Shown here: positions 1-64,000 of the stretch, in pieces
Layout of the letters: each line of letters opens with the position of its first letter
Numbering within the stretch: position 1 is the first letter of the stretch
The notes under the pieces: model-generated
Databases searched by the model: none
The model's input: the letters and a program-made list of their open reading frames with translations, nothing else
Told to the model about the DNA's origin: nothing
From: Anthoceros angustus
Lineage: Eukaryota > Plantae > Anthocerotophyta
Direction: 5' to 3'
Assembly: GCA_010909165.1 (NCBI GenBank)
Contig: VJWM01000144.1
Coordinates: 124,001 to 188,000, forward strand
Length of the DNA: 64,000 bases
Program-made: the position numbers and the translations under genes

Positions 1-2266
1 AGCGATCACTATGGGAAAGCTGATGAGCAAGGCAGACTATGCACTGACGAACTTTGCAACGCAGGAGGAAGTGGCTGACATCCCTGTTGAGGTTGATGGT
101 GTGGTCTTTCATCTTAGTGACACTGACTTGGAACTGTACCCTTACGAGGAGACCCAAGTGATGGGTAAGATTGTTCAGACTCTGAATGATCATTTCCAAG
201 GTGTAGAGAAGCGGACTGGTGTGGATGATGAGAGCTGGCACACTTCCTTCGAGAAATTTCTCATGGCATTGGCTGATAGACGGAGGAGCAGAATTCTGGA
301 ATGGCTCAGGTGCAACACAACAGATTTTCCGGAGGATGGTGACGTTCAGAAGCTTCGTTTGGAAGCTATTGCCACGCTGGCAGAAGTGAAGCAGAGCCTG
401 TCCCTGTGTAGCTGCAAGTGCGAGAAGTGTTTCCTGAGATGCGTTCTTGAGAAAGGTCATCCAGGCCTGCACACGTGCAGGGGGAAGCATTACTGCTCGG
501 ACGTTTGTACGTTTTGCTCTGAGGAGCAATTGACGAGCTTGCTGTCTAGTGCGTGTGGCCATCTCTCGGGACATGAAGGTCCACACGACTGTAAGTGCAG
601 AAGTCACACTTGTGCAAAGGATTGTTCTCTTCTCAAATCATCCAACTGCAACCGGACCTGTGCTATGAAGCCTGGACATGCTGGAGAGCACAGATGCAAC
701 ACGAAGCAGCACGTGTGTGCAGAGAAGTGTTCTCTATCGGAGTGTAACAACCTCTGCACTTTCAGTGTTGATTGTGGAGAACACGATGAACATGTTTGTC
801 ATGAAAGGATGTGTCCCATGACGTGCATCGTGGACGGATGCAACAGGAAGTGCATATTCGAGGACCACTTTCATTCTCTTACCTCTGCTGGGCATTTCTG
901 GTAACGAACACACTTGCAAGGCGCAGTGTGAGGATGATGGAATATGCGAGATTCTGACAGAGGTGGTGAAGAAGTCCAAGGTTTTGTAGGGAAGCGATCT
1001 TCTTTTGAATACGAGCATGTGTCGGAGCAGGATGGGATCAGGAAAGGTTGCTGTATCCTGATTCCACCCTGGGAGGCTAAACACGAGGGCCGGCACTGCC
1101 ACACTGTCAACCCCAATGCAGTACACTTTTGCACCACAAGATGTCCTGCTTGTGCATACTTCTGCAATCTTCCCATTGGGCATCTGGGCTTACATGACAC
1201 CACACACGGAAACATGAGAGACGTCAATTTCGTGGCAGAGTCAGAGGACATCGACCTTGTGGACAGGAAATATGCTTGGGGAGAATCCGGTGTGGCCGAG
1301 ATGTGCGTTGTACATTGTAAAACCCAGCGGCACATCCACTTGGTCAGGTCTGGTGCCCATGGTGGAAGCAAGGAGGGCAAGGCATCAGACTGGACGGCAT
1401 GGGCCTGAGACGACTGTCCCCAAAGATGAAATGAGCCACACAGCTTACTGGAGGCACTTGAGGTTCAAGGATCCCTGCGCGGGACCAGAGGCAGGTCGAG
1501 ATGTGTCGCTCGGAAGATCATGCATCTGCAACCGCGGCATCGCGACAGCGATCCTACTGCACTGAGAAGTTGTGGCACAAACCTGTCAGGAGTACAGGAT
1601 CTACAACTATGGAAGGGTATGCGACGGAGAACGGCCATGCCGTGGCTGCAACAAGATGAAAATGCTCCATGCCACCTAGTGTTCGTCATCGACAGGTCCT
1701 ACTCTATGGGCTCTAGATGTGAAGCCAACACTGGCAAGATTTGCAGCCCTCAACAACCGGCTGGGCTGCGTGTACGAAGCCGTCACCCGATTCATCCGGA
1801 CTCGGATTGCAGATGGTCAGCTAGATGTGGTATCCATAGTCCTCTTCCGCCAGCCAAGCCATCATCGCCGTGGAGAGACAGCCCATTTCTGAGAACCTTC
1901 TAGATGGTCTCCCGCAACACTCCAAGATCCGTGGAGGCGCCATCTACTCATGCGGCCTGGATCTGGTACAGCAGATTCTACAGCGAGCTTCTGCGGATGC
2001 CTCGATCCTAGGCAAGCAGCCTGCTGTCATCTTCCTGAGTGGCGGCGCAAATTGCGGTGTCACGGATCCGGTGGCCATGGTGAAGAAGATGAAAGACCGC
2101 GACAACAATCTCGTCTTCCACACGATCTTCCGTGCAGACAATAAGGACGAGGAGACATTGCAGAGGATGGCAGCCTCCGGCGCGGGAAGTACCAGGTCTG
2201 CATCCACGGAGTGCAGCTAACAAGGAGCTTTGAAGGTTTAGCCAAGAGTTTGAGGACATGAGGTAG
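1..2266 (+). pseudogene. Giant GTPase-ZnF-vWA gene, copy 0 (3' part only; 5' end lies outside the window); vWA end degenerate
   Basis: ORFs 11-904, 944-1408, 1520-1903 and 1870-2220 are collinear with copy 1 from about 9519 onward. Near-identical up to about 1300, then divergent. MIDAS motifs are altered (DRSYS, LSGG) and there are many frame breaks, some of which may be sequencing error. Confidence 0.7.
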
Positions 2267-4603: not shown

Positions 4604-7600
4604 ATGGGAGGAGGTCCAGAACTGTTGGAGGGAGCGTCGGAATTGAGCGGCGATGAGGTTTTGACCCCCGCGTGGCCTGATACCGAAAGCGGTGTAGCTC
4701 ACTCAGGGGAGTTCATATCAGTAAGGAGCAGTGGGGATGCGGCAATGGCGCTCCCTCTAATTTGTGTTGCATCCTCGCCTGTGAGCCAGCGGGTTGAAAC
4801 AATTGATTCCCTCGTTTTGCGAGGGGAAGACGGGGAGGTTGATGTAGCCGACGCTGGTGAGTGCGGTTCTCCTCCTGTTGTTGTTCCTCACCCTGTCTTG
4901 GAGGTTGAGGCCGTTGGAGCTGAAACTGCATCCCTGGTGGGGTTGGAAGATGACCGGGAGAAGGTTGAGAGAGTTTCCGTTCCCCGAATGTGAGGCCGGG
5001 GTTGCGAAGGTGTTACCTGATGCTAGCAGCGATGCAAGTGTTGAGGCCGACTCTGCACAGGCTCATGCACCTGAGGGATGATAAGCTGGATCAGAGCTGT
5101 GGAGAAGGTCGTCTTACCCAGACGAGATTGTGAAGTTCTGCAATGAGGTCAGACTGAAGTCAGCAGCGTGTCGTGATGGAAAGACGGTGCTGGATTTCAA
5201 TGCGTTGAACAACGAATCTGTACACGCTGTGGGATCAGGCGGGAGCAAGAAAATTCGCCTGAATTTTCTCGGAGCTTGGGTTGCAGACTGTGGTGTCCTC
5301 GATGCTTGGCCTCTTGATGTAGGGATTTATGGCTTTCTTCATCAGGGAGTATTGTTCATCTTCTATTGGCATGAGGGTGAGCGAATGCTTGAGGCCTCCA
5401 GGAAGGATGTGTCTTGCAACTTCATTCGTTATGTGGCGGACTTGTGTGCCACTGTTTACATCTGCCTGGACGATGAAAATGACGTGGATTTGTCTCTCAT
5501 GACCTCGGGGCACTCTACTGCTGCCTCTATAAAGCAGCGTACGCGGAGGCTGCAGATAGCTAAGGTCAGGCAGTCAGAGAACGATTTGAAGCTGCGGAAA
5601 GGCTTTCACAACTGTTCTTCTATCCTCACAGGGAAGAAGCCAGGCAATGTCGAGACATCTTCCTGCTCGGAGCGTGGTCTCAGACTTGCGGGCGGTCTTC
5701 ACCGTTGCGTTTTTCTTACTTCATCACGTGTCCCTCCTAAGAAAGTTTTGAATCCACATCAGAAGACTGTGGAGATTCGAAACTTTGCAAAGCTTGTTGA
5801 GGAATGGTGCTTCCGCTAATCTTGACTTCATTCAACTACCTCACCGTGACTTTTGCCTGTTTCTAGAGCATGCTGGTCTTGAAGGAGCAGAGACTATCGC
5901 GCGCTGAAGGATTCCTTCGAAGTACGAAGAAAATCTCTAAAGGAAAAGTTTTACAACTTAGAGGAGCGCTTGCAGGATGAAGAAAAGAAGATTTTGAATA
6001 TTCTAAACGGAGTTCAAAATGCGTACTTGAAGCTTTACCATCCATGGGCTGAGAGCCTTGTTGCGACCTCTGAGGTTGACTCGTCCGGTGGAGCCTCCTC
6101 ACCCGTGCAGAGTGCGTTCGAACCCAACGATGTGCTTCAGGCAGAAGCTGCCCTGGTTAACATCTGGACAGGTGACTGTGCGGTTCAAGCAGGAGAAAAG
6201 TCTGAATCTTTCATTTTTGTTGGCACACAATTCCGAATGATCATGGCCGACGGGACCTCATGGCGCACTGAGAGCTATGACACTGACGAGTTCATCGTGG
6301 TTAGCTTTTCCTCAGCACGGTCTTCAAGATCGGCAGGGCCTATCCTTTATGGGGAGGAATTTGTGGCCATAGCCAGAGGCGTTGTAGCAGAGAACCAGAT
6401 TAAGCTTACGTGCAAGGCTCTGAATGAGAATTTTCCGGAAGGTCCTGTGTTAACGTCTCGATATATGAGCGTCACCATCCAGCATGTCAGTATCCAAAAT
6501 CGAAGTATTAAGAAAGTGGCCCAATTGATGCTTAGTACAGGAGGACCATCAGGCGAAGGGATGCTTGCATGGATGGAGTCATATGGCAAGCCTGTTGTCC
6601 ACCCTATCCAAGAAAGCATCGATACTCTGGTCTCTGCAGTTGAAAATTCTTCGATCAACAGTGACACCATCGTTGCTCGAGTTTTACAAGCTGCACACGA
6701 GGTCTTGAAGTCGTCTGAGCTTCTCATCCAATTTAAGAAGCGATATTCAAAGCAAGTTATGGCGCAATTGTTGAAGGAAAATGAAGTGAACATGGACTCC
6801 AAAAGCCCCACCCAGGAGGCGGAAAACGCGTTCAACCTCGTTGCCCCTGAGGAGAGGGAACTACTCCTGCAACTGGTGCGGAAGGTTTATGTTGAAGCCC
6901 GTGTTGAATTTTCGCGCGCAGTACAGACAATGGTGAAGAAGGAACTATGCCCCATGTTGATGAAGAAGATGGAGTTTGAAGCAAAGCATAATACCACTTT
7001 CCTAGAGCAGTCCTTTCGAAAGGAGGAAAGGGAATTTGTGACTAGCTTGCAGCAGCAGCTGTCCAGAGGGACACTTCGAGAGCGTCGTCTGTCTGTCCGA
7101 AGTTGTATCTTTCAGCGTGGTGTGAAAGAGACCTTCCAACCTAAAGCTTTACTTAAAACTATCGGTTTGCTTCGCAGCTCAGAAGGTAAAAGCTGTGACA
7201 AGCTGGAGGTTCATTTTTTGTTGGAAGAACCAGACAGTGAGCGGCTCGCGTGGACCATAGCTGAGCTTACACCGATGAAGAAAGATTTGGACGCTTTCAT
7301 GTGCGACTCCGGGCACCTCATCATCCCAAAATGTTCGGAAAACCACAGGTTGATTGAGGTCGACCCAAACTTACAGAGGCTATTTCAAGTAGTTGCGGTG
7401 AAATCTGGTGAAGTTTTAGTGTTCGTGGAGCATCTTGAAGAGCCAGCAGTTCATCTCTACGTGCTCTCGAGGTTGGGTGTAGAGATACAAGGCATGAATT
7501 CCGTCAAGAGATTCAAAAGAGGTTACGACCTTATGGCTGTGGACGAAGTCTCGAAATTTGTTGGCCTCTATGATAGGAAAATGGAAAAAATCGAGATCCT

Positions 7601-10600
7601 GCGCCTTGACGAATCCTTCCGCCATACGGAGTGGTCTGGAGTTACCCTGCAACTGTCCGAGTACTGCGGAATTCAACCCTTAACTTCAATCTGCTTTGTC
7701 CCTGGCAGGAAAGAAATGGTTGTAGTCGACGAAGAATCCAAAGTTCGGGTCTTCGAGATCAGTCAACCTGCGATGCTGCGACCAGGGCATATGCAGTTAC
7801 CTGGTCGTGCCCATAAGATTTGTGTGTCTACAGATGGATCTTGTTTAATGGCTTTCTACAAGGCTCTTCCAGACGGACCTTCGGAAGCAGCAGAGGGGAT
7901 GACGGAGAGTAGTGACGAGAGCGAAGATACAGAGCCTGAAATGGACGAGTCTGCTGAAGGCTCTTTGAAGATTGAGGTCTACATGCTTGGCGAATCAATA
8001 TGTCATCTCAAGACACTCTTCCTTGGCTACGCAGTAGCAGACGTAAGAAGCATTGATGCAGCTGTAGTGGCCTTCGGATCACAGGTCCATCTCGTACTTC
8101 TGGATTCTTCCAGGCCGGAGAAAGGAATATGGTCAAACGTCATCGAGATCACATCGGCTTCCGAAGTCTGCCAGCTGCAACACATGTACAGAGGTCAGCA
8201 AACTGGTATTTGCTCTGCAAGCACTCTAAAAAGTAGGCATGGCTGTCCGGCTTTGGATTATGTTTACCAGATGTTTGAGAAGTATGCGACGAGTCCCCCT
8301 TTGATCCAAAAGACCAGGTATCTCCATCTCCATCTGGTGTTCGCTGGCGAATCCAAGGAGAAACTGGAGGCTTTGAAGGACAGCTCTGTGAGTTACGTGA
8401 AAGGTTCCATGGACAAACTGGCACGAGATAAAGGAAAAGATTTCTCGCAGCTAAAGTTAGCTGTTTCCGCAGGCACGGTGGATAGCTACATCGTCCATAA
8501 TTTTCTTGTGCAGAGCACGGAAGACAGGAACAGTGCGGATCTCGGGGATTGGGTGCGGCTACTGGTTTGCCTTGTGCCCATTCAAATAGCCCGAGCTGAA
8601 AACAATACCTTGCGGCCTTTGGTGAACGGTCTGCAGAATCCCAGCCTTACTTATGCAGATGCTGTGGGGCTTGCTGAGGCTCTACGATTTGGTTTCTATG
8701 ACTCCGTATTAGCCCACTGGTCTGGGAATATCAAAGTGATATCGTCCATGGGAAAGCAAAGCAGTGGAAAGTCCTACCTGCTCAACCATTTGGCCGGCTC
8801 GTTACTCGATGTGGCTGCAGGCAGATGCACGGACGGAGTATGGATGACTATGCGGGCATCGGAAAGCTGCTTATATGTCCTTCTGGACTTCGAGGGCCTG
8901 GGAAGCTTTGAGAGAAGCGAGCAGGAGGATATGCTCCTCTCTATTCTGAATGCAGCTGTAAGCAACACCATATTCAACAAAACGGTAAGACATCCAATCT
9001 GACCTTGTGGATTGGTCATTATGATGCGTGGTGCCGTAACACATAGGGCTGACCCCATGATGTGGACAGGATTTTCATCTGGACAAGGAAACAGAAGCCG
9101 TGTTTGAACGCTTTCAGAATGGCGTCAGCTTGGTAAAGCAGGACAGCCGGCTCTTTAAGGGCCTCTTTTACATGGCCATCAAAGACGTGGATACATCAGA
9201 CGTGGATGACTTGAAAGAGGAGTTCTCAGCGAAAATACAGCAAATATGTAACAAATCGCCAGACAACTTTCTCACAAAGATGTACGGCGGGGCGGTTGAG
9301 ATAGCAGCAATGCCACCCTTCCAAAGGTCGGAATATCACGAGAGCGTTGCTGAGGTAGCTGCAACTGTGGAGGAATTGGAATCGGTCCACCATAATGGGA
9401 ATAGTCTCGCAGTAGACCTGAAGCTGGTAATAGCTCAGATCACCGCCAAGGATTGGTCTCCAATCGACTCGAAGCGCTTAGCTTTGAAACTGGAACTCCT
9501 GAAAAGACACATGAATGCAGCGATCACTATGGGAAAGCTGATGAGCAAGGCAGACTATGCACTGACGAACTTTGCAACGCAGGAGGAAGTGGCTGACATC
9601 CCTGTTGAGGTTGATGGTGTGGTCTTCCATCTTAGTGACACTGACTTGGAACTGTACCCTTACAAGGAGACTGAAGTGATGGGTAACATTCTTCAAACTC
9701 TGAATGATCATTTCCAAGGTGTAGAGAAGCGGACTGGTGTGGATGATGAGAGCTGGCACACTTCCTTCGAGAAATTTCTCATGGCATTGGCTGATAGACG
9801 GAGGAACAGAATTCTGGAATGGCTCAGGTGCAACACAACAGATTTTCCGGAGGATGGTGACGTTCAGAAGCTTCGTTTGGAAGCTATTGCCACGCTGGCA
9901 GAAGTGAAGCAGAGCCTGTCCCTGTGTAGCTGCAAGTGCGAGAAGTGTTTCCTGAGATGCGTTCTTGAGAAAGGTCATCCAGGCCTGCACACGTGCAGGG
10001 GGACACATTACTGCTCGAAGGTTTGTACTTTTTGCTTGGAGGAGCAATCAGCAGGTTTGCAGCCTAATGAGTGTGGCGATCTCTCGGGACATGAAGGTCC
10101 ACACGACTGTAAGAGGCAGAGGCACACATGTGTCATGGATTGTTCTCTTCTCAAATCATCCAACTGCAACCGGACCTGTGCTATGAAGCCTGGACATGCT
10201 GGAGAGCACAGATGCAACACGAAGCAGCACGTGTGTGCAGAGAAGTGTTCTCTATCGGAGTGTAACAACCTCTGCACTTTCAGTGTTGATTGTGGAGAAC
10301 ACGATGAACATGTTTGTCATGAAAGGATGTGTCCCATGACGTGCATCGTGGACGGATGCAACAGGAAGTGTGGGTTCGAGGACCACTTTCATTCTCTTAC
10401 CTCTGCTGGGCATTTCTGCGGTAACGAACACACTTGCAAGGCGCAGTGTGAGGATGATGGAATATGCGAGATTCTGACAGAGGTGGTGAAGAAGTCCAAG
10501 GTTTTTGTAGGGAAGCGATCTTCTTTTGAATACGAGCATGTGTCGGAGCAGGATGGGATCAGGAAAGGTTGCTGTATCCCGATTCCACCCTGGGAGGCTA

Positions 10601-11871
10601 AACACGAGGGCCGGCACTGCCACACTGTCAACCCCAATGCAGTACACTTTTGCACCACAAGATGTCCCGCTTGTGCATACTTCTGCAATCTTCCCATTGG
10701 GCATCTGGGCTTACATGACACCACACACGGAAACATGAGAGACGTCAATTTCGTGGCAGAGTCAGAGGACATCGACCTTGTGGACAGGAAATATGCTTGG
10801 GGAGAATCCGGTGTGGCCGAGATGTGCATGATGCACTGCAAAATCCAAGGCCGCGGGCACATCCACTTGGTCAGGTGCCGTGCCCATGGTGGAAGCATGG
10901 GTCCGTCCAAAGGTTTCTGTAAGGAAGGAATTCATGAGGGAACAAGGCATCAGACCCGAAAGTACGGGCCTGACAACGCTGTCCCCAAAGATGAAATGAG
11001 CCACACAGCTTACTGGAGGCACTTGAGGTTCAAGGATCCCTGCCGAGAAGACGATCAGAAGGAGTTTGAGATGTGCAACCACTACTGCCGCTCGGAAGAT
11101 CATGCTTCCGCAACCGCAACCTCGCAACAGCGATCCTACTGCACTGAGAAGTTGTGGCACAAACCTGTGAGCAGGACAGGAACGACTTCCAGCGCAGGGT
11201 ATGTGACGGAGGACGGTCATGCGTTCGGCTGCAATCACATGAAGAATGCTTCAAGCCATGTGATGTTCGTCATCGACAGGTCAGGCTCCATGGGTTCGTC
11301 AGACGTGAGGCCAACACTGGCTAAGTTTGCAGGCTCCTCCAACAACCGCCTGGGATGCGTGTACGAAGCCGTCACCCGCTTCATCCGGACCCGGGTTGCA
11401 GGAGGGCAGTCGGATGTGGTGTCCATTGTCCTCTTCGACCACCTGGCCACCATAGCAGTGGAGAGGCAGCCCATCTCGGAGAGACTTGTAGACAATCTCC
11501 TCCACCACTACAGAGTCGGTGGAGGCACCGTCTACTCAGCCGGCCTGGATCTGGTTCAGCAAATTCTGCATCGAGCTGCACTGGATGCGTCTATGCAAGC
11601 CAAGCACCCTGCAGTCGTCTTCTTGAGTGATGGTGGGAATGGGGGTGGTACTGAGCCGGTTACCATGGTGAAGAACATGAAGGACGTCGACCACAAGCTT
11701 GTCTTCCACACCATCCTCTTCGGAGCAGACCATTCCCAGGAGCAGAGATTGAAAAGGATGGCATCCGCAGGCGGGGGGACGTACCAGGTCAGCATCGACG
11801 AAGTGCAGCTCGCAAGGACCTTTGAAGGTTTAGCCAAGAGTCTGAGGCCGAAGGTTGCTTCCCTCATGTAA
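4604..11871 (+). CDS. Giant VLIG/GBP-superfamily GTPase with beta-propeller-like region, Cys/His zinc-finger-like repeats and C-terminal vWA; copy 1 (most intact, about 2,400 aa)
   Basis: ATGGGAGGAGGTCC start shared with copies 2 and 3. ORFs 5970-9002 and 9100-11871 join in frame through the intron 8985-9069. G1 GKQSSGKS at 8751-8774, RCTDGVWM, DFEGLG, IKD; Cys/His repeats about 9925-10740; vWA DRSGS...GGT...LSDG about 11250-11860. A few frame breaks at 4990-5900. Confidence 0.88.
8985..9069 (+). other. 85-nt phase-0 GT-AG intron inside the GTPase domain (copy 1)
   Basis: ACG|GTAAGA ... GCTGAC ... CAG|GAT. Splicing gives NTIFNKT-DFHLDKETEAVFERFQ, in frame with the ORF starting at 9100. Confidence 0.85.
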
Positions 11872-13740: not shown

Positions 13741-14027
13741 ACAGCGTATCCTGAGTCCTGATTTGTCTTCCCTTCCAGTCTTCCAGTGTCCACCTAGTCG
13801 CGAAGTGCCGGGCCAAAACCACGACGACTGCTTCTTGTGCTTGCAGCCGTTTTCTGAGTTGCCACTCGCTAGTAGCTGGGGGATCTGCAGGCAGAGCTCG
13901 TCAAGCTCGTGAGATAGGTTGGTTGAGAGCTTGATTCATGACGCTACTTCACTTGTCTGCGGTTTAGCCATCGAAGCACACTGACTGACACGTACCCTTG
14001 CTTGAAGCAGCAGGTTCCGGAGCTGTC

Positions 14028-17000
14028 ATGGGAGGAGGTCCGACGGAACCGTTGGAGGAAGTGGAATTGAGCGACGATGACAGTGTGGCTCCACGCGGCC
14101 TGACACCGAAAGAGGTCTTGCTGACCCAGGGACTCCAGATCAGTGATGACCTTTTCGGCGCCAGGAAGGGACGCGGCAGTGACGTTCCCTCCGGTGTGTG
14201 CTGGATCCTCACCTGCCAGGCCGGCCGTTGAGACGCTCGACTCCCTCGTTTTGAGATGTGAGGAAGGGAGAATGATGCATTGGACAGAATGGAGTGCGAT
14301 TCTCCTGTTGTTGTTGTTTCTGAGCCTTTTTGGGGTTGAGGCCGTTGCTAATGAAACCGCACGCCTGACGGACTTGGAGGATGTCGGAGAGGAGCTTGAA
14401 GGTGTCCCTCGGAATGTCGTGCGAGAGGTTGGAAAGGTGTCACCTGATGCTGGCAGCGATGCAACTGTAGAGGGCCCCACTTTGCACAGGTTCATGCACG
14501 TCAGGGCGGACAAGCTGGACCAGAGCTTTGTTGAGAAGGTCATCTTACCTCCGGATGAGATTGAGAAATTCTGCAATCACGTCAGGCTCAACTCAGCGGC
14601 ATGCCGTGATGGAAAGACGCTGCTGGATTTCAATGCCTTGAACTATGCGTCTGTCCACGTTGTAGGACTGTATGGAAGTAAGAAGGTGCTCGCTCGAATT
14701 TTCTCGAAGCTTGGGTTTCAGAGCGTGGTGTCGTCGATGCTTGGCCCTCTGGATGTAGGGATTTATGGCTTTCTTCATCAGGGCGTATTGTTCATTTTCT
14801 ATTGGCATGAGGGTGAACGAATGCTGGAGGCCTCCAGGAAGGACGTGTCTTGCAACTTCATTCGTTGTGTTGCAGACTTATGTGCGACTGTCTACATCTG
14901 CCTGGACGATGAAAACGATGTGGCCTTGTCGCTCATGACCTCCGGCGCTCTATTGCTGCCTCTAAAACGCAGCGTACGCAGAGGGTGCAGATATCAGTGG
15001 TCAGGAGTCAGAGAACGATGTGAAGCTGCGCAAGGGCTTTCACAATCGTACTTTATTCTTCTCGAGGGAGAAGCCAGGCAATGTCCAGCCATCTTCCTGC
15101 TCGGAGCCAAGTCTCAGACTTGCTGGCGGTCTCCACCGTTGCGCTTTTCTCACTTCATCAGTTGTCCCTCCTAAGAAAATTGAGACGAGTCATCACAAGG
15201 TACTGGAGTGTCAACACTTGGCGCAGGTTGTTGAGGAATGGTCGGGCCTCTTCAATCTTGACTTCACTCAGCTAGATTACCTCGAATTTGGCCTGTTTTA
15301 GAACATGCGGGTCTTGAAGGAAGCAGAGACTATCGCTTGCTCAGGGAGTCCCTCGAAGCAAGAAGAAAAGCTCAACATGGAAAGTTCTACGAGGTGGAGA
15401 AGCTTTTACAAGAGAAAGAAGAGACGCTTCTGAGCATCTTCAGCGGAGCTCAGCAAGCGTACTTGAAGCTCTATCACCCATGGGCAGAGAATCTGGTTGC
15501 TGCCTCTGAGGTTCACCCTTCTGGTGTTGCCTCCTTATGCACGGAGTGTTCGTTTGAACCGAATGATCTGTTTGAGGCAGAAGCGGCCCTGGTTAACATC
15601 TGGACAGGTGATGGTGGCCTTCAACCAGGAGAAGATTCTCAATGTTTGATTTTTGTGGGCACAGAATTCCGAATGTTAAAGGCCGACGGGACTACAGTGG
15701 TAAGCAAGGGTGTTGACGAATTCATCGTGCATCGAATTTCCTCAACACGATCTTCAAGATCGGCAGGGCCGATCCGTTGTGGGGAGGCATTTGTGGTCAG
15801 ACCCAAAGGTGCTGGAGCAGAGGACGATCTTGAGCTGACATGTAAGGCTGTGAAGGAGGATTTCCCTGAAGGTCCAGTTTTAACGTCTCGAATTATGGAA
15901 GTCACCATCAACCATGTCGGTACCCGAAGTTGCTTTAAAGTGATGCTTATCAAAGAAAAACCCTCAGGCGAAGGGATGCTAACATGGATGGAGGCATATG
16001 GCAAGCCTGCTGTGCTTCCTATCGGGGAAAGAATCGATGCTCTGGTCTCTGCACTCAAAAACCCTTCGGTGAACAGTGATGGCATCCGTTCTCGAGTTTT
16101 ACAGTATGCACAGGAGATCGTGATGTCGTCTGATCTTTTCAGCCTGTTCAAGGAGCGATTTTCAATACAATCTCTGGCGCAGATTCTGATGGAAAACTCG
16201 GAATGCTGCAGGAGAGGTGTATCTGAGAGGACCTCTCAGGCCGTGGAAGCTCCGATCGACAAGTTCACCCCTGAGGAGGAGGAACTACTGCTGGAACTGG
16301 TGCGAAGGATTTACGTTCAAGCCCTTGCTGAATTTTCGAGCGCATTAGAGACAATGGTGAAGAAAGAAGTAGTCCCCTTGTTGAAGAAGAAGATCGAGTT
16401 TGAAGCAAAGCGTAACACTAACTTCTTCAAGCAGTCCTTCCAAAAGGAGGAAAGGCAATTCCTGACCAGGTTACAAGAGCAGCTGTCCAGGGGGACACTT
16501 CGAGAACATTGTTTGTCCGTCCGAAGGTGTACCCTTCAGCGTGGTCAGAAAGAATCCGTTGTTGCTAAAGCTGTCAATTTTCTTTCAGGCCGCAGTGACA
16601 AGCTGGAGGTTTATTTTGTGTCAGAGCAAACAGACAGTCAGCGAATCGCCTGGAACATAGCCGAGCTTACACCAATGAAGAAGGACCTGGACGCTGCCAT
16701 GTGCACCTGGGCACCTCATCATTCCCCAGTGTTCGGAAAACTACAGGTTGATTGAGGTCGATCCACACTCAGAGAGGCTATTTCAAGTAGTTGCGGTGAA
16801 ATCTGGTGAAGTTTTAGTGTTCGTGGAGGATCTTAAACAGCCAGCAATTCATCTCTACCTGCTCCCGAGCTTGGGTGTAGAGATACAAGGCATGAATCCC
16901 GTCAAGAGATTCAAAAGGGGTTACGACCTTGTGGCAGTGGATGAAGTTTCAAAACTTGTTGGTCTGTATGATAGGGGATTGGCCAAAATTGACATCCTGC

Positions 17001-20000
17001 ACCTTGATGAATCCTTCCGCCACATGGATTGGTCTGGAGTTACGCTGAATCTTTCCGAGTACATCGGAATGAGGTTCTTAACTTCGATGTCCTTCAGCCC
17101 TGGCAGGAGAGAATTGGTGCTGGTGGACGAAGAATACAAAGTTCGGGTGTTCGATATCAGCACTGCCATGCTGAAGCCAGGGGATATGCAGTTACCTGGT
17201 CCTGCCCATAAGATTTGTGTTTCCACAGATGGATCTTGTTTAATGGCCTTCTATAAGTCCCGTCCAGACGGACCTCCGGAAGCAGCAGAGGGGTTGACGG
17301 AAAGCAGTGACCAGAGTGAACATAGAGGGCCTGGAATGGACGAGTCTCCTGAAGGTTCTTTAAAGATTGAGGTCTACTTGCTTGGCGAATCAGTATGTCA
17401 TCTCAAGACACTCTACCTTGACTACGAAGTAACAGATGTAAGAAGCATTGATGCAACCGTGGTAGCCTTCGGATCACAGGTCCATCTCGTACTTCTGGAT
17501 GCGTCAAGGCCGGACAGAGGCATATGCTCAAACGTCATTGAGATCACAACGGCCTTGGACGTCTGCCAGGTGCAACATATGCACAAAGGTCGACAAACTG
17601 GCATTGCCTCTGAAAGCACTGAAAAGGGTGGCCATGGCTGTCCGGCTTTGGACTATATATCAGATATTTGAGAAGTATTCGACGAGTGCCCTCTCATCCA
17701 GAGGACAAGAGATTTGCATCTGCATGTGGTTTTGCTGGAGAATCCAAGGAAAGCCAGGAGGCCTTGACGCAAGGCTCTGTGACTTACATCAAAGGTTCCA
17801 TGGACAAGCTGGCGAGAGATAAAGGGAAAGATTTCTCGCAGCTGAGGTTAGCTGTTTCCGCAGGCTCCGTGGATAGCTACATCGTCGATAACGTTCTTTT
17901 GGAGAGCACGGAAGGTAGAAACAGTGCGAATGTAGGAGACTGGATACGACTACTTGTTTGCCTCGTGCCAATTCAAGTAGCCGAGCTGAGAACAATACCT
18001 TGCGGCCTTTGGTAGACGGTCTGCAAAATCCCAACCTGAATTATGCAGATGCACTGGGGCTTGCTCAGGCGATTTGGGTTCTACGACTCCGTGTTAGCCC
18101 ATTGGTCTGGGGATATCAAAGTGATATCGTCCATGGGTAAGCAGAGCAGTGGCAAGTCCTACGTGCTCAACCATTTGGCTGGTTCGCTACTCGATGTGGC
18201 TGGAGGAAGATGCACAGACGGAGTATGGATGACTATGCGTGCATCGGAAGCTGCTTGTATGTTCTCCTTGACTTTGAGGGCCTGGGAAGCTTTGAGAGAA
18301 GCGAGCAGGAGGATATGCTCCTCTCTATTCTAAATGCAGCCGTGAGCAACATCACCATATTCAATAAAAGGTATGACATCCAATCTGACATTGTCAATTC
18401 GGTAATGATCATGAGTGGTACCATAACACACAGGGCTAACTACATGATCTGGACAGGATTTTCATCTGGACAAGGAAACAGAAGCTGTCTTTGAGCGCTT
18501 TCAGAATGGCGTAAGCTTGGTGAAGCAGGACAGCCGGCTCTTCAAGGGCCTCTTCTATATGGCCATCAAAGACGTGGATACATCAGACGTCAATGACTTG
18601 AAAGCAGAGTTCTTAGCGAAGATACAGCAAATATGTCACAAATCTCAGGACAACTTTCTTACAAAGATGTACGGAGGGGCAGTTGAGATAGCAGCGATGC
18701 CACCCTTCCAAAGGCCCGAATATCAGGAGAGTGTTGCCGAGATAGCTGCAACTGTAGAGGAATCGGAAGCTGTCCACCACAATGGCAACAGCCTCGCAGT
18801 AGACCTGAAGCTGGTAATAGCTCAGATAACTGCTAAGGATTGGTCTCCGATTGACTCAAGCGCTTAGCTTTAAAACTGGAGCTCCTGAAGAGACACATGA
18901 CTGCAGCAGTTACTATGGGAAAGCTGATGAGCAAGGCAGACTATGTCCTGACAAACTTTGCAACGCAGGAGGAAGTGGCTGATATCCCTGTTGAGGTTGA
19001 TGGTATGGTCTTCCATCTTAGTGACACTGACTTGGAACTGTACCCTTACAAGGAGACTGAAGTGATGGGTAACATTCTTCAAACTCTAAATCACTATTTT
19101 CAAGGAGTAGAGAAGCGGACCGGTGTGGATGATGACCGTTGGCACACGGCGTTCGAGAAATTTCTCATGGCATTGGCTGATAGACGGAGGAAGAGAATTA
19201 TGGAATGGTTAAGATGCAACACAGCAGAGTTCCAGCAGGAGGATGGTGATGTTCAGAAGCTTCGTTTGGAAGCCATTGCCACATTGGCGGAGGTCAAGCA
19301 GAGTCTGTCCCTGTGTAGCAGCAAGTGCGAGAAGTGTTTTCTGAGATGCGTTCTTGATAAAGGTCATCCAGACCAGCATACCTGCAGGGGGAACCATTAC
19401 TGCTCGGCAGTCTGTACGTTTTGCCTTCAGGAGCAATCAACAGGCTTGCAGTCTAATGAGTGTGGCGATCTCTCGGGACATGAAGGCCCACACGACTGTA
19501 AGTGCCGGAGCCACACATGTGCGGAGTCTTGTTCTCTTCTCAAATCATCCAACTGCAACCGGACCTGTGCCATGAAGCCTGGACATGCTGGAGAGCACAG
19601 ATGCAACACGAAGCAGCACGTGTGCAGAGAAGTGTTCTCTATCGGAGTGTACCAACCTCTGCACTTTCAGTGTTGATTGTGGAGAACACGATGAACATGT
19701 TTGTCATGAAAGGATGTGTCCCATGACGTGCATCGTGGACGGATGCAACAGGAAGTGTGGGTTCGAGGACCACTTTCATTCTCTTACCTCTGCTGGGCAT
19801 TTCTGCGGTAACGAACACACTTGCAAGGCGCAGTGTGAGGATGATGGAATATGCGAGATTCTGACAGAGGTGGTGAAGAAGTCCAAGGTTTTGTAGGGAA
19901 GCGATCTTCTTTTGAATACGAGCATGTGTCGGAGCAGAATGGGATCAGGAAAGGTTGCTGTATCCCGATTCCACCCTGGGAGGCTAAACACGAGGGCCGG

Positions 20001-21413
20001 CACTGCCACACTGTCAACCCCAATGTAGTACACTTTTGCACCACAAGATGTCCCGCTTGTGCATACTTCTGCAATCTTCCCATTGGGCATCTGGGCTTAC
20101 ATGACACCACACATGGAAACATGAGAGACGTCAATTTTGTTGCAGAGTCAGAGGACATCGACCTTGTGGACAGGAAATATGCTTGGGGGGAATCTGGTGT
20201 GGCAGAAATTTGCCACATGCACTGTAGATCCCAAGGCCGCGGTCACATCCACTTGGTCGAGTGTGGTGGCCATGGAAGGAAGGGTCTGGTCAAAGGCGTC
20301 TGTGGGAAGAGAGCAAGGCATCAGACCCGACAGTATGAGCGGCTCTATAAGAACGGACTTCTGGAGGCACCAAGATATCAGACCCGACAGTATGAGCGGC
20401 TCTGTAAGAACGGAATTCTGGAGGGAGCAAGGCATCAGACCCGACAGTATGAGCGGCTATGTAAGAACGGAATTCTGGAGGGAGCAAGGCATCAGACCAG
20501 AGAGTATGGTCCTGACACGACTGTCCCCAAAGATGAAATGACCCACGCAGCTTACTGGAGGCACTTGAGGTTCAAGGATCCCTGCCGAGAAGACGATCAG
20601 AAGCAGTTTGAGATGTGCAACCACTACTGCCGCTCGGAAGATCATGCTTCCGCAACCGCAACTTCGCAACAGCGATCCTACTGCACTGAGAAGTTGTGGC
20701 ACAAACCTGTGAGCAGGACAGAAACGACTTCCAGCGCAGGGTATGTTACGGAGGACGGTCATACGTTCGGCTGCAATCACATGAAGAATGCTTCAAGCCA
20801 TGTGATGTTCGTCATCGACAGGTCAGGCTCCATGGGTTCGTCAGACGTGAGGCCAACACTGGCTAAGTTTGCAGGCTCCTTCAACAACCGCCTGGGATGC
20901 GTCTACGAAGCCATCACCCGCTTCATCCGGACCCGGGTTGCAGGAGGGCAGTCGGATGTGGTGTCCATTGTCCTCTTCGACCACCTGGCCACCATAGCAG
21001 TGGAGAGGCAGCCCATCTCGGAGAGTCTTGTAGACAATCTCCTCCACCACTACAGAGTCGGTGGACGCACCTTCTACTCAGCCGGCCTGGATCTGGTTCA
21101 GCAAATTCTGCATCGAGCTGCACTGGACGCCTCTATGCAAGCCAAGCACCCTGCAGTCGTCTTCTTGAGTGATGGTGGGAATGGGGGTGGTACTGAGCCG
21201 GTTACCATGGTGAAGAACATGAAGGACGTCGACCACAAGCTTGTCTTCCACACCATCCTCTTCGGAGCAGACCATTCCCAGGAGCAGATATTGAAAAGGA
21301 TGGCATCCGCAGGCGGGGGGACGTACCAGGTCAGCATCGACGAAGTGCAGCTCGCAAGGACCTTTGAAGGTTTAGCCAAGAGTCTGAGGCCGAAGGTTGC
21401 TTCCCTCATGTAG
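14028..21413 (+). CDS. Giant GTPase-ZnF-vWA gene, copy 2 (chimera of a copy-3-type 5' part and a copy-1-type 3' part); many single-base frame breaks
   Basis: ORF fragments 14143-15174, 15337-16755, 16748-17671, 18517-18867, 18897-19676 and 19851-21413 are collinear with copy 1; GKQSSGKS, RCTDG, DFEG and MIDAS are present. Whether it is intact or a pseudogene cannot be resolved from this consensus. Confidence 0.75.
18371..18456 (+). other. 86-nt GT-AG intron, copy 2
   Basis: AAAAG|GTATGA ... GCTAAC ... CAG|GATTTTCAT, at the same position as the copy 1 intron. Confidence 0.8.
20311..20509 (+). repeat. In-frame 57-bp (19-aa) tandem repeat, 3.5 units
   Basis: Units start at 20311, 20368, 20425 and 20482 and encode (GARHQTRQYERLCKNGILE)n. 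Confidence 0.92.
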
Positions 21414-23599
21414 TAGACTTGGTGTTGCAAGACATCATCCGAAAGCCCTTCTCAGCTTCTGTGCCTCATGCGATACCCAGAATGAACGATGTCAAAATCT
21501 CCAAAATAGCCAGTCTCAACGCCTGGGAACTTCACGAAAACAAGAGAAACGTGCCTTCCTTCCTAACCCTGGACGCGTCCTCCTTTGTGCAAGAACGGGA
21601 GGTCGTGGTCCCAGACTCGCGGAGCGTGGAGGCCGGGTCCTCGCGGTAGGCGCGCAGACCGCATTTCGATTGACTCGGGTTGCCTAGTAATCCATGATTC
21701 ATGAGAGGGCTCCGAGATGCGGCCATGGCCGTTTCTCATCGGTTCAAAGGGCAAATCTGTGCCGAATTGTGTCGTTCTTTGCATGAGAGCATGCACTTGA
21801 TGCTGGGGGTCACACTGTGATTTTTCCAAGGATCCCAAGGTATCGAAATCTACGTACCTCTTCTACTTTTCAGCAAAGAAGCCGCCCGCTGTTGGTCACG
21901 GCGGCTAGAATACTTGCGACCAGGGTTCTTCGGATTGGACTCAAGCACCAAGATGTGGGCCCGTCCACACCTGGTGACACATACTAGACTTCAGACCACG
22001 AAGATTGATGCCAAGGATTAGTGCGGACTTGGTCAAGCCCATACCGCCTAAGCGGGTTTTCTACCTTCTTTAGTTGATTAGGCGTTACAAAATGATTATG
22101 AACTTTAAAAAAATAATAGCCAGAGTGCTCTCTAGCACAGCTTCCAGGCCGATGCCATCTATCGTTCCATATGATTTGAAAAGTTTCGGAATCGACATCG
22201 TACGTCAATATCTTTCAAAATGCGAGGTCGATGCCATGGAAACGGAAACGGCCATATACACCAAGTTTCAAGTTTCAAGTTTACTATTACAAGTCTCACC
22301 ACATGTGGTCCTCGATGGGGGATTGGATCACCCACTCTTTCATGGACGGGTGCGTGCATGGTTAGGTGCTCACTTTAGTTAGAAACGGTTGAAACGCTCT
22401 TATTTTGTCCTCACGCAATGTCTACAATTATGAAAAATTCATTTCTTTTCCAACTTGTCTGATTTTTTTTTAAATGTTATGGTAATGTCTATTTTTATCT
22501 AGGATTAAAATTTAATAAAGAATGGTATATTAAAATATGCTTAAAAAATTCAACTTGTTTAAGGACAATGTCCCCACATAGCTGGCCTTTTGCCGCTTCA
22601 TTTTACGAACCCGTGGCCTGGGAACGGCCCACCCACGCCCGCCTTCAAAATGCTGAGTTTAATAATCATTTTATGGTTAGGTTGAATATCATTTGCTGTG
22701 GTGCAAAGGGATCAAGTATGTGCATACCGCTAGCCGCAAATGACCTAGGTAATCAGAACTCAACTTGAACTCAGGCTATCGTTAATCGTGACAAGCTCCG
22801 TGGCTACATGTGGAGGACGTGGTGGAAGGAGCGGATCGTTCGACGGCGCTAAAAGTTGCAAGTAGGTCCGCTGGGTTGGTGGATATGCGGCGGTGTCTTG
22901 CAAATACGGTGGATAGTGCCGTGGCGTTGGAGGTGGTGCCTTCAAACTCTTGGCTGTTTTTGGGACGGTGCTATGGTTCGGTCACCTTCCCAACAACGGA
23001 GTCGATGGGCAGCAGCCAAACGTCGCCAACGGCAAAGCGGAAGCACTAATAACAAAGGTGCTTCACGTGAAGCTGGTGTCCAGGGTGTAGGAGGAAGAAG
23101 GGTAGGGATACATCTTAGAGGTGGACAGGAGCAGATGTTAAACGAGGAGACACGTCCTCCAGCAGCGGCAAGGAGAGTAGGGGAGGATGCTCCTTCCGTA
23201 GAGTTGAAGGAGAGGGCGCCAAAACATCAACAGCCCGTGTACATAGAGAGCGGCGGCTCTTGCAGCCACGTATTAGGGAATGCTCGGCAAGAAGAAGTGG
23301 CTCGACACTAGCCAATCGCTTTTATGCTCATCACGCATACACGAAAGTCGAGAGACATCTTGGAGGTGTTTAGTCACCTACCACTTCTCAAGTTGTATAG
23401 GCCGGGGCTACAAAGGATGCAAAAGAGATCCAACTAGGAGCATTGTTGTTGAAGAATGTGCGTGAGGCTTGCACAAACTTGAAGGCGCCTGTTGGAGACC
23501 ATTTGTGAGCAAGGAACACCTGCTCAACGTCATTTTATCTCAAGATCTCCAAGACAATCACCTTGTTGCTACGCTTTCCCACCACATTGGAGTCAGGAG

Positions 23600-44169: not shown

Positions 44170-44441
44170 GACAGCGTTACCTGAGTCCTGAGTTGTCTTC
44201 CCTTCCAGTCTTCCAGTGTCCACCTAGTCGCGAATTGCCGGGCCAAAACCACGACGACTGCTTCTTGTGCTTGCAGCCGTTTTCTGAGTTGCTGGGATCT
44301 GCAGGCAGAGCTCGTCAAGCTCGTGAGGTAGGTTGGTTGAGAGCTTGATTCATGACGCTACTTCACTTGTCTGCGGTTTAGCCATCGAAGCACACTGACT
44401 GACACGTACCCTTGCTTGAAGCAGCAGGTTCCGGAGCTGTC

Positions 44442-51693: not shown

Positions 51694-52347
51694 TGTAGCC
51701 TTTTTGTATCATCGGCCTGTCATCTGCAGACTTCCAAGTGGGAAGTCAGATGTGCAGAGAGTATGTATTGCATGCTGCAGTTCATTGCCTTCAATTGGGA
51801 CAGACTTTTGGATCTCGTGGCGAATTTCGTTGGTGACCTGTGGAGGCCTACCGTATTGGGCTAGAAGTGTTCAAGTGTTCATCCCGACCATTTTCCAATG
51901 CTGCCCGACTCAAAGCATGCAGCATAACTGTGATGAGAGCATGGCAAGCACCTTGCAAGCATTGGTGCTTGCAAGGGTTCCTGTGACGGAAGGCCATAAC
52001 CAGCATTCTTGCACTGCATATCTGAAATTCTGAATACAATCTCAGGGTCTCGCATGGTTGCCATGGAAACAAATAACGAACAGCCAATTAGGTACTCTGC
52101 TAAGCATCCGGTGCATCCATCCCTGAATGATCATGATCCCAGTTTTCTACGGGCTTGCTCAATCTAAAAACCATCCTTTCTGACCCAGCAGACACCTAAC
52201 AAAAAGCTTGCTTGCAATTCGCCTAGCTCAACAGAAATCAGTACATAAGCATCTGTACAGGAGCATCATTCAACTGAATGTCACTGCGCGTTCAGGTTGT
52301 CGTTTCCTTGTGCAGTGACATTCCAGTGCTTTCTCTGCGTGTCCTTG

Positions 52348-63640: not shown

Positions 63641-63647
63641 CAAATTT

Positions 63648-64000
63648 CCAAAGATGAAATGACCCACGAGGCTTACTGGAAGCACTTGATGTTCAAGGAT
63701 CCCTGCCAAGAAGATGATCGGAAGCAGTTCAAGATGTGCAGCCACCACTGCTGCTCGAAGATCATTCATCTGCAACTGGGACCACGCAACAGCGATCCTA
63801 CTGCACTGAGAAGTTGTGGCACAAACCTGTGAGCAGGACGGGATCCACTTCCAGCGTAGGGTACGTGTCGGAAGATGGCCATGCCTTCGAGTGCAGTCAC
63901 TTGAAATATGCTCCAAGCCATGTGGTGTTCGTCATCGACAGGTCTGGCTCTATGGGCTACAGACGTTAAGCCAACACTGGTGCAATTTGCAGCCTCCTTC
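63648..64000 (+). other. Fragment of the GTPase gene (pre-vWA linker and start of vWA), near-identical to copy 3 50814-51168
   Basis: Begins abruptly at CCAAAGATGAAATGACCCACGAGGC, fused to the transposase remnant; runs off the window. Confidence 0.9.

What the first reader, a model, noticed from the sequence alone, without database searches (positions are those of the whole stretch)
20482..20600. One linker acts as an exchange hotspot for swappable C-terminal vWA cassettes
Seen: the conserved string CCAAAGATGAA(A/G)TGA(C/G)CCAC occurs in all six copies (about 1420, 10985, 20527, 50814, 55557, 63648). The copy 2 crossover, the start of the fragment at 63648 and roughly the point where copy 0 leaves copy 1 (1300-1470) all map at or near it. 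At least four vWA versions exist (copies 1/2, 3, 0 and 4). Inference: the vWA behaves as an interchangeable specificity or decoy module, like integrated domains on NLRs.
Basis: partly seen in the sequence, partly recalled or inferred. Interest (0 to 1): 0.7.

Follow-up and report, generated by a model that had tools for sequence, protein, structure and literature searches.

The report
Chimeric copy in tandem GTPase-vWA array
In a side-by-side cluster of giant GTPase-vWA genes of a non-flowering plant, one copy is a real hybrid of two neighbours joined just after a conserved coding motif, but this looks like ordinary unequal crossing-over and gene conversion between tandem duplicates rather than a system for swapping vWA modules.

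Summary
The 20-mer occurs six times. Copy 2 switches from copy-3-like to copy-1-like between 20547 and 20548, the base after the 20-mer. The fragment at 63648 starts on its first base. Copy 0 leaves copy 1 at 1307. There are four vWA versions.

- The 20-mer encodes (V)PKDEM(S/T)H, a motif conserved across land plants. It is the first conserved block after a short variable spacer, and one of 13 equally conserved blocks in the last 2.4 kb.
- Copy 2 also carries copy 1's 3' flank and lies between its two parents, which fits an anti-Lepore-type unequal crossover.
- The vWA is always the same domain. It is attached in relatives from red algae and fungi to conifers.
- All window versions form one clade.
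- Synonymous divergence between copies 1 and 3 is the same in the vWA as in the rest of the gene (about 0.35-0.44). vWA dN/dS is 0.3-0.45.
- In Cryptomeria, Taxus and Ginkgo paralogs, trees made before and after the motif agree.

Boundaries do cluster around the spacer: 5 of 15 against 1.5 expected, p about 0.02, a post-hoc count. A mild hotspot is therefore not excluded.

This scan's own notes already called copy 2 an anti-Lepore-type fusion. At least eight further paralogs elsewhere in the genome could not be examined.

The parts
20527..20546 (+). The 20-mer in copy 2. It encodes PKDEMTH in frame. The other five occurrences are at 1420-1439, 10985-11004, 50814-50833, 55556-55575 and 63648-63667.
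   Evidence: for the matches. Searches show the peptide is conserved across land-plant homologues (D631, H635 and W639 of the copy-1 ORF are invariant).
20547..20548 (+). Recombination junction of copy 2. The last copy-3-type site is 20547 and the first copy-1-type site is 20548 (conservative interval 20547-20559).
   Evidence: Informative-site runs, the alignment, and the AU tests.
14027..20547 (+). Copy-3-like part of copy 2. The similarity continues into the 5' flank from about 13244. Substitution divergence from copy 3 is 1.38% overall, ranging from 0.24% to 6% by segment.
20548..22346 (+). Copy-1-like part of copy 2: the Cys/His module, the vWA, the stop codon (21413) and copy 1's 3' flank. 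Divergence from copy 1 is 1.7% in coding sequence and 4-17% in the flank.
20311..20508 (+). A 57-bp in-frame tandem repeat (3.5 units; 19-residue unit containing RHQTRQYE) inside the variable spacer of copy 2. It ends 19 bp before the 20-mer. Copy 3 has 1.5 units (50712-50795). Copies 0, 1 and 4 have only the native partial unit.
10808..10977 (+). Variable, indel-prone spacer of copy 1, between the last Cys/His repeat (GRGHIHL..C) and the conserved RH.T..YGPD..VPKDEM block. No conserved 20-bp window falls inside it.
   Evidence: The protein alignment shows length variation here in all species.
10150..10808 (+). Block homogenised among copies 0-3 (98-100% identical; dS 0.02-0.07 against 0.35-0.44 elsewhere). 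It is a gene-conversion tract whose right edge abuts the spacer.
1..1306 (+). Part of copy 0 that is nearly identical to copy 1, apart from patches at 146-178 and 486-618. Divergence starts at 1307. The copy-0 vWA (to about 2255) is a separate, older version (dS 0.47 to copy 1) with the MIDAS Thr changed to Ala and the MIDAS Asp changed to Gly.
4604..11871 (+). Copy 1, the best-preserved gene. It reads as two long ORFs (5970-9002 and 9100-11871) separated by one GT..AG intron at about 8985-9073 within the G domain. The vWA core is at about 11245-11868, with an intact MIDAS motif.
44441..51694 (+). Copy 3, the parent type of the 5' part of copy 2 and of the fragment c5. It has its own vWA version.
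55319..55325 (+). Junction of an in-frame 813-bp deletion in the degenerate copy 4 (52406-56351). It removes the equivalent of copy 1 10004-10816, that is most of the Cys/His array. Its right end lies at the start of the spacer.
63648..64000 (+). Fragment c5, a copy-3-type tail that starts at the first base of the 20-mer. It shows 0 substitutions against copy 3 and is cut by the window end. Upstream lies unrelated, transposon-like DNA (DUF7869 on the minus strand at 62919-63218).

Best explanation
This is a tandem array of paralogous genes for a giant GBP/URGCP-like GTPase with a Cys/His array and a C-terminal MIDAS vWA. The array evolves by ordinary non-allelic homologous recombination.

The 20-mer is not a recombination signal. 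It is the coding sequence of (V)PKDEM(S/T)H, the first strongly conserved motif after a short, length-variable spacer. That motif opens the conserved C-terminal unit: about 85 residues of Cys/His module, then the vWA.

Copy 2 was made by one unequal crossover between a copy-3-type and a copy-1-type gene. This is an anti-Lepore-type duplication product: parent, chimera, parent. It carries copy 3's 5' flank and copy 1's 3' flank.

Since then, gene conversion has kept each half close to its parent. Gene conversion has also homogenised the highly conserved Cys/His array just upstream in copies 0-3.

Inferred reasons why boundaries gather at the spacer:
- Similarity between paralogues collapses there (indels, 76-86% identity). 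Conversion tracts stop there and their ends become visible there.
- A junction between domains is tolerated by the protein.
- The copy-2/3 lineage carries a 57-bp direct repeat at that spot.

The vWA itself is a constant, anciently attached domain under purifying selection, not a swappable or decoy cassette.
For: Shown:
- The chimera has a single sharp switch at 20547/20548.
- AU tests reject the alternative groupings at p<1e-60.
- The copy-1-like sequence continues past the stop into the 3' flank, to 22346. The copy-3-like sequence continues into the 5' flank.
- The gene order c1-c2-c3 fits a duplication product.
- The two halves have similar coding divergence from their parents (1.38% and 1.73%). 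The flanks are older, at 4-17%.
- The homogenised block has dS 0.02-0.07, against a uniform 0.35-0.44 for copy 1 against copy 3 in every other segment, including the vWA.
- The motif is conserved in Taxus, Cryptomeria, Ginkgo, Adiantum, Riccia and others, while the segment just before it varies in length.
- The 20-mer is one of 13 equally conserved blocks.
- The architecture is present in relatives from red alga and fungi to conifers.
- The window copies are monophyletic in both the pre-motif tree (96/90) and the post-motif tree (99/98).
- Gymnosperm paralogue trees before and after the motif agree in every starred clade. AU p is 0.03-0.41 for the unstarred differences.
- vWA dN/dS is 0.33-0.39, MIDAS-face loops 0.44-0.46, and the N-terminal part 0.63.
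- MIDAS residues are invariant across the family.
- The vWA core folds confidently (pLDDT 80-95) and matches solved MIDAS vWA domains.
- No hairpin or inverted repeat lies at the site.
Against: - Boundaries are enriched near the spacer: 5 of 15 against 1.5 expected, p=0.019.
- The copy-2 junction and the c5 start are only 21 bp apart (about 0.006 by chance for two uniform breaks). They are of different age, so one event does not explain them, and the loss of similarity in the spacer does not fully explain them either.
- The vWA versions escape the homogenisation seen just upstream. Selection for vWA diversity would also produce that.
- Amino-acid differences are significantly denser in the MIDAS-face loops for three pairs (Fisher p 0.006-0.025).
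- Only six copies were visible. At least eight further paralogues elsewhere in the genome could not be read.
- No read-level check of the junctions was possible.
Confidence: 0.7

Rival explanations
1. A true local recombination or breakage hotspot, driven by sequence. The spacer, in particular the 57-bp direct repeat of the copy-2/3 lineage, is fragile or recombinogenic, so double-strand breaks and their repair products concentrate within about 200 bp of the motif. This would hold whatever the function of the vWA.
For: - Five boundaries lie in c1 10808-11006.
- The two most precise ones, the copy-2 junction and the c5 start, both involve copy-3-type DNA. They lie 39 bp and 19 bp after the end of the repeat.
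- The repeat number changed in copy 2 (3.5 units against 1.5).
- c5 (0 substitutions against copy 3) and copy 2 (1.4-1.7%) are of different age, so the events are independent.
Against: - The number of events is small, and they were chosen after seeing the data.
- Three of the five (10808, 10817, 10828) lie at the edge of the conserved Cys/His array, where tract ends are expected to be scored.
- There is no secondary-structure potential (z=0.58) and no inverted repeat.
- Ten other boundaries lie elsewhere in the gene.
- Gymnosperm paralogues show no discordance at this position.
Confidence: 0.15
2. The C-terminal vWA unit is a specificity (or decoy) module. Selection favours reassorting it between paralogues through the spacer, as with integrated domains on NLR immune receptors.
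For: - Copy 2 combines a copy-3 body with a copy-1 vWA.
- vWA versions stay distinct while the region just upstream is homogenised.
- Replacements are denser in the MIDAS-face loops.
- The family resembles animal defence GTPases and is tandemly amplified.
Against: - There is only one domain type, and it is attached throughout the family.
- All versions are monophyletic, with no outside donor.
- dS in the vWA equals that of the rest of the gene for copies 1 and 3.
- dN/dS is below 0.5 everywhere in the vWA. The N-terminal part is the faster-evolving region (0.63).
- The exchanged piece in copy 2 includes the 3' flank.
- Copies 0 and 4 carry damaged MIDAS sites.
- c5 is an isolated fragment next to transposon-like DNA.
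- The gymnosperm trees agree.
Confidence: 0.08
3. Assembly artefact. The copy-2 chimera, the c5 fragment, or both are mis-joins in a noisy long-read assembly of a repetitive array.
For: - Nearly all 1-2 bp indels between copies 2 and 3 are homopolymer contractions. That is the signature of unpolished long reads.
- c5 has no substitutions against copy 3, only missing bases.
- Tandem arrays are prone to mis-assembly.
Against: - Copy 2 differs from both parents by real substitutions on each side of the junction: 1.4-1.7% in coding sequence and 4-17% in the flanks.
- Copy 2 also has a unique repeat expansion. It is therefore a separate locus, not a splice of copy-3 and copy-1 reads.
- For c5 the artefact cannot be excluded.
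Confidence: 0.07

Closest known systems
Lepore / anti-Lepore-type fusion genes made by unequal crossing-over between tandem paralogues (textbook case: the human delta/beta-globin fusions)
   Same: Copy 2 has the 5' part and 5' flank of one paralogue and the 3' part and 3' flank of another. It has a single switch point, and it lies between its two parents, as expected for the duplication product.
   Different: The parents are about 17% diverged, and the gene is 7.3 kb with a single intron. After the event both halves went on exchanging sequence with their parents: coding divergence is 0.2-1.7% against 4-17% in the flanks. The present junction may therefore be a maintained boundary rather than the untouched original crossover.
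Sequence exchange (unequal crossing-over and gene conversion) in plant resistance-gene clusters. This comparison rests on established knowledge of NLR and Cf clusters and was not tested here.
   Same: A tandem array of large, possibly defence-related genes with mosaic paralogues, patchy conversion tracts, decayed copies and interspersed transposons.
   Different: The gene family is different (GBP/URGCP-like GTPase, not NB-ARC). An immune role is untested. The part with the highest dN/dS is the N-terminal region, not the C-terminal domain.
NLR integrated-domain hotspot (MIC1 clade with the CID motif; Bailey et al. 2018, PMC5819176)
   Same: A conserved motif sits at the point where the C-terminal part changes partner. 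The genes lie in tandem or clustered arrays.
   Different: MIC1 carries 35 different Pfam domains taken from unrelated donor genes just after the CID motif. Here the domain is always the family's own vWA, the versions are monophyletic, and the motif is conserved in all relatives whether or not any exchange has happened.

Membership tests
NLR-ID-type integration hotspot (MIC1/CID, PMC5819176) | Many unrelated domain types found at the same position in different members | tested here: not met
   All six window copies, and all full-length relatives from red alga to conifers, carry a vWA at the C-terminus.
NLR-ID-type integration hotspot (MIC1/CID, PMC5819176) | The integrated domain derives from an exogenous donor gene | tested here: not met
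   The vWA versions of the window form one clade (99/98) nested in the family tree. For copies 1 and 3, dS in the vWA equals that of the rest of the gene.
NLR-ID-type integration hotspot (MIC1/CID, PMC5819176) | A clade-specific conserved motif lies immediately upstream of the integration point | tested here: inconclusive
   A conserved motif lies at the junction, but it is family-wide rather than specific to exchanging members. In c5 it belongs to the moved piece.
NLR-ID-type integration hotspot (MIC1/CID, PMC5819176) | Genetic pairing with a helper receptor | not tested
   No head-to-head partner gene was looked for. All copies are on the + strand.
Anti-Lepore-type unequal-crossover fusion | The 5' part comes from one paralogue and the 3' part from another, with one switch point | tested here: met
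   Twelve copy-3-type sites run to 20547, then a copy-1-type run starts at 20548. AU p<1e-60.
Anti-Lepore-type unequal-crossover fusion | The flanks follow the respective parents, and the chimera lies between the parents | tested here: met
   The 3' flank 21413-22346 matches copy 1's flank and the 5' flank from 13244 matches copy 3's. The order is c1-c2-c3. The middle of the two intergenic regions is not alignable (21 kb of extra, transposon-rich DNA between c2 and c3).
Anti-Lepore-type unequal-crossover fusion | Both halves are equally old relative to their parents | tested here: inconclusive
   Coding divergence is similar (1.38% and 1.73%) but heterogeneous (0.24-6%), and it is lower than in the flanks (4-17%). 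This indicates later conversion.
Concerted evolution by gene conversion | Discrete tracts where synonymous divergence collapses relative to the flanking parts of the same genes | tested here: met
   dS is 0.02-0.07 in c1 10150-10805 against 0.35-0.44 elsewhere. Between copies 0 and 1, dS is 0.02-0.10 upstream against 0.47 after the motif.
MIDAS-type vWA domain | vWA fold with DxSxS, Thr and Asp metal-site residues | tested here: met
   Pfam VWA_2 at 1.4e-10 and VWA at 2.7e-06. The AF2 core has pLDDT 80-95 and matches C2a, factor B, BatB and others at E about 1e-10. MIDAS residues are invariant in the family and intact in copies 1-3. Two are lost in copy 0, and one is deleted in copy 4.
GBP/URGCP/RHD3-like large GTPase | Dynamin-superfamily G domain with a P-loop | tested here: inconclusive
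   Exon 1 of copy 1 ends in the G domain (GKQSSGKSYLLNHL). GBP scores 22.6 bits against a cutoff of 21.1. URGCP_GTPase scores 33.6 bits, below its cutoff of 55, because the ORF is cut by the intron. The exons were not joined.

The most novel reading that the evidence does not exclude
The spacer plus PKDEM motif is a real, recurrently used module boundary. Through it, whole C-terminal units (Cys/His module plus vWA) are reassorted among paralogues of an unstudied, possibly immune, giant GTPase family. This would create new combinations of N-terminal sensor, GTPase and vWA, as in copy 2. Selection would keep vWA versions distinct while the rest is homogenised.
Probability: 0.15. Interest if true: 0.6.

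Novelty: new member of a known kind. Interest (0 to 1): 0.3.

Why it matters
The family is a large, unstudied GTPase-zinc-vWA family. It is amplified in tandem in non-flowering plants and resembles animal defence GTPases. Knowing how its arrays diversify is useful background for anyone who takes it up.

The result here is mostly sobering. The array behaves like any tandem gene cluster, with one Lepore-type chimera, patchy gene conversion and decaying copies. The vWA is an old, constrained partner of the GTPase, not a shuffled decoy.

The small excess of boundaries at one domain boundary is worth a proper genome-wide test, but it does not by itself show a new mechanism.

Tried and rejected

2. 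Independent DNA replicates in other plants. The Taxus and Adiantum loci were found, but no DNA could be delivered because the files are too large. I used protein trees of the Cryptomeria, Taxus and Ginkgo paralogues instead.

3. Same-genome paralogues. The protein database holds nothing closer than 57%.

4. One double-strand break producing both copy 2 and c5. I rejected this as the simplest reading. c5 has 0 substitutions in 353 bp against copy 3, while copy 2 is 1.4-1.7% from its parents, and the two pieces overlap by the 20-mer.

5. A structure-forming DNA element at the site. There is no inverted repeat, and the DNA folding z-score is 0.58.

6. Showing that the motif lies in folded protein. 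The AF2 model is confident only for the vWA core. The Cys/His module that contains the motif has pLDDT below 50, so this is undecided.

7. Calling copies 0, 2, 3 and 5 pseudogenes from their frame breaks. I rejected this, because the breaks are almost all homopolymer contractions typical of assembly error.

8. The Cryptomeria pair P0027/P0028 is 100% identical from the middle of the protein on, but only 62-78% identical before that. The change is near the intron, and the two come from different annotations. I did not count it as a recombination event.

9. The two exons of copy 1 were searched as separate ORFs by reference. I did not build or search a joined spliced protein.
Full report
**What the window holds.** The window carries six + strand copies of one gene family.
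- c0: 1-2255, cut by the window start.
- c1: 4604-11871.
- c2: 14027-21413.
- c3: 44441-51694.
- c4: 52406-56351, degenerate.
- c5: a fragment, 63648-64000.

Copy 1 is the best preserved. It reads as two long ORFs separated by one GT..AG intron at about 8985-9073. Pfam finds the start of a GBP/URGCP/RHD3-type G domain at the end of the first ORF and a vWA at the end of the second. Between them lies a long Cys/His-rich array. I searched the two ORFs separately by reference and did not join the exons.

The closest proteins in public data are only 55-57% identical. They come from a moss, a liverwort, conifers and ferns. The host is therefore a non-flowering plant whose own proteins are not in the database.

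**The observation.**
- The degenerate 20-mer has six exact matches and none in shuffles. That is expected for paralogues.
- In the copy 1/2/3 alignment, copy 2 follows copy 3 (1.38% substitutions) up to 20547. It follows copy 1 from 20548, through the stop codon and into copy 1's 3' flank as far as 22346.
- The switch lies between adjacent bases. Twelve copy-3-type sites come before it and a long copy-1-type run follows it. The conservative interval is 20547-20559.
- DNA trees put c2 with c3 before the motif and with c1 after it. The alternatives are rejected at AU p<1e-60.
- c5 becomes homologous to copy 3 exactly at the first base of the 20-mer.
- Copy 0 is almost identical to copy 1 up to 1306 and diverges from 1307. 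A 65-bp identical island lies around the 20-mer.
- Four vWA versions exist. c5 is the copy-3 version.

**What the string is.** In frame it encodes PKDEM(S/T)H. Aligned with homologues from Taxus, Cryptomeria, Ginkgo, Adiantum, Riccia and unnamed transcripts, RH.T..YGPD..VPKDEMTH..YW is one of the best conserved stretches of the protein. The segment just before it, after GRGHIHL..C, differs in length in nearly every sequence.

At the DNA level, the last 2.4 kb of the gene has 13 blocks as conserved as the 20-mer among five copies. No such block lies in c1 10808-10977. The true variable spacer is therefore 10808-10977, and the 20-mer is the first conserved block after it.

The vWA core begins about 260 bp further on. 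The AF2 model has pLDDT 80-95 for residues 157-357 and matches solved MIDAS vWA domains. Between the motif and the core lies a conserved Cys/His module of about 85 residues. That module was modelled poorly (pLDDT below 50), so I cannot say whether the motif itself is folded.

**How copy 2 arose.**
- The copy-1-type sequence of copy 2 includes the 3' flank. The copy-3-type sequence includes the 5' flank from about 13244. The order is c1, c2, c3.
- This is the expected duplication product of an unequal crossover between misaligned copy-3-type and copy-1-type genes (anti-Lepore type). This scan's notes had already proposed that reading (s1-300204), and my tests agree with it.
- The flanks are 4-17% diverged from the parental flanks. 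The coding halves are only 0.2-1.7% diverged, with one 6% patch at 15601-16200.
- I infer an older duplication followed by continuing gene conversion between each half and its parent. On this inference the junction persists because similarity to the 'wrong' parent drops there.
- Copy 2 is not a mis-assembly of its parents, because it differs from both by real substitutions and has its own repeat expansion.

**Gene conversion elsewhere.**
- Copy 1 against copy 3 synonymous divergence is uniform along the gene: 0.36-0.44 in the N-terminal and G-domain segments and 0.35 in the vWA.
- The exception is c1 10150-10805, where dS falls to 0.06. There copies 0-3 are 98-100% identical.
- Copies 0 and 1 have dS 0.02-0.10 upstream of the spacer and 0.47 after it.
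- For copy 0 the tree position after the motif is still compatible with copy 1 (AU p=0.385). The copy 0/copy 1 contrast is therefore one of depth (upstream homogenisation), not a demonstrated vWA swap.
- Copy 4 has an in-frame 813-bp deletion of most of the Cys/His array. Its right end is at the equivalent of c1 10817.

**Is the spacer a hotspot?** I counted 15 boundaries of tracts, deletions or fragments in the window. Five fall within 200 bp of the 20-mer, in c1 coordinates:

| Position (c1) | Boundary |
|---|---|
| 10808 | right edge of the homogenised block |
| 10817 | right end of the copy-4 deletion |
| 10828 | copy 0 leaves copy 1 |
| 10985 | start of c5 |
| 11006 | copy-2 junction |

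- The expected number is 1.5, giving Poisson p=0.019.
- The copy-2 junction and the c5 start are 21 bp apart, about 0.006 by chance.
- These numbers are post hoc and the events are not independent.
- The first three boundaries sit at the edge of a conserved, poorly informative block. Any tract end inside that block would be scored at its edge.
- Ten boundaries lie elsewhere.
- The site has no hairpin potential and no inverted repeats.
- Its one structural peculiarity is a 57-bp in-frame direct repeat in the copy-2/3 lineage: 3.5 units in copy 2 and 1.5 in copy 3. It ends 19 bp before the motif. Both sharp breakpoints involve copy-3-type DNA.

A mild, lineage-specific fragility is possible but unproven.

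**Is the vWA a swappable or decoy module?** The evidence is against it.
- The GTPase-Cys/His-vWA architecture is present in full-length relatives (2000-2600 residues). These come from Cryptomeria, Ginkgo, Selaginella, Ceratopteris, mosses, liverworts, the red alga Galdieria and several fungi.
- All window versions form one strongly supported clade both before and after the motif.
- The Cryptomeria tandem paralogues, with Taxus and Ginkgo, are an independent test set. Their trees before and after the motif share every starred clade, including a Taxus-Cryptomeria orthologue pair. AU tests of the unstarred differences give p 0.03-0.41.
- vWA dN/dS is 0.33-0.39. That is higher than the G domain (0.03-0.15) and lower than the N-terminal region (0.63).
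- The loops on the MIDAS face carry more replacements (Fisher p 0.006-0.025 for three pairs), but their dN/dS is 0.44-0.46.
- MIDAS residues are invariant across species and intact in copies 1-3. Copy 0 has lost the Thr and the Asp, and copy 4 lacks the strand with the Asp.

The defining features of the NLR integrated-domain hotspot are many unrelated domains from outside donors placed after a clade-specific motif (PMC5819176). The tested ones are not met here.

**Caveats.**
- Most 1-2 bp indels between copies 2 and 3 are homopolymer contractions. Frame breaks in copies 0, 2, 3 and 5 may therefore be assembly errors, and I do not call those copies pseudogenes on that basis.
- c5 shows no substitution against copy 3 and lies next to transposon-like DNA at the window end. 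It may be a very recent fragment duplication or an assembly artefact.
- At least eight further paralogues in this genome were out of reach.

**Verdict.** This is a well-documented Lepore-type chimera with concerted evolution, in a tandem array of an interesting but unstudied gene family. It is a known kind of event in a new place. The hotspot idea is weakly suggested, and the cassette or decoy idea is not supported.

Noticed in passing
window 14027-20270 against 44441-50700: Almost all 1-2 bp indels between the near-identical copies 2 and 3 are contractions of homopolymer runs (GGGG to GGG, CCC to CC and so on). In some segments indels outnumber substitutions. This is the signature of an unpolished long-read assembly, so frame breaks in this array are unreliable evidence for pseudogenes.
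   Followed up: partly
window 55319-55325: Copy 4 carries an in-frame 813-bp deletion that removes the equivalent of copy 1 10004-10816, nearly the whole Cys/His array. The end points lie in similar H.C / TGCA contexts of the first and last repeat units.
   Followed up: partly
window about 1750-2100 (copy 0 vWA): The copy-0 vWA keeps DxSxS but has the MIDAS Thr replaced by Ala and the MIDAS Asp (LSDG) replaced by Gly. This version probably no longer binds metal.
   Followed up: partly
window 15601-16200 against 46017-46620: This patch shows 6% substitution divergence, with in-frame 6- and 12-bp indels, between copies 2 and 3, which are otherwise 0.2-1.5% diverged. The differences are a mix of copy-1-like and unique states, which suggests conversion from a paralogue outside the window.
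   Followed up: partly
window 13624-13738 and 43827-44168: A 34-bp satellite lies just upstream of copies 2 and 3, with 3.4 and 10.4 units. A 126-bp tandem duplication lies at 12650-12898 in the copy-1 3' flank.
   Followed up: no
window 22346-43392: About 21 kb of extra DNA lies between copies 2 and 3 and has no counterpart between copies 1 and 2. It includes a Copia-type Pol fragment (39722-40348, minus strand; Pol_BBD at 2.6e-26) and a long TGGGGATG microsatellite (26285-26716).
   Followed up: no
window 56700-63650: The stretch between copy 4 and c5 holds PPR-repeat fragments (57742-58179), an integrase-like fragment (60509-61012) and a DUF7869 match on the minus strand (62919-63218, 2.7e-19). 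It is a transposon-rich stretch that abuts the 5' end of c5.
   Followed up: partly
proteins P0027 and P0028 (Cryptomeria japonica): Two annotated proteins are 100% identical from the middle of the protein to the end, but only 62-78% identical before that. The change is near the position of the family's intron. This is either two gene models that pair different first exons with one second exon in a tandem array, or a real exon-level chimera.
   Followed up: no
window 12182-12357, 2491-2704 (minus strand), 54166-54378: A short dispersed repeat of about 200 bp is present in the 3' flanks of copies 0 and 1 and inside copy 4, in different orientations. It is probably a small mobile element.
   Followed up: no
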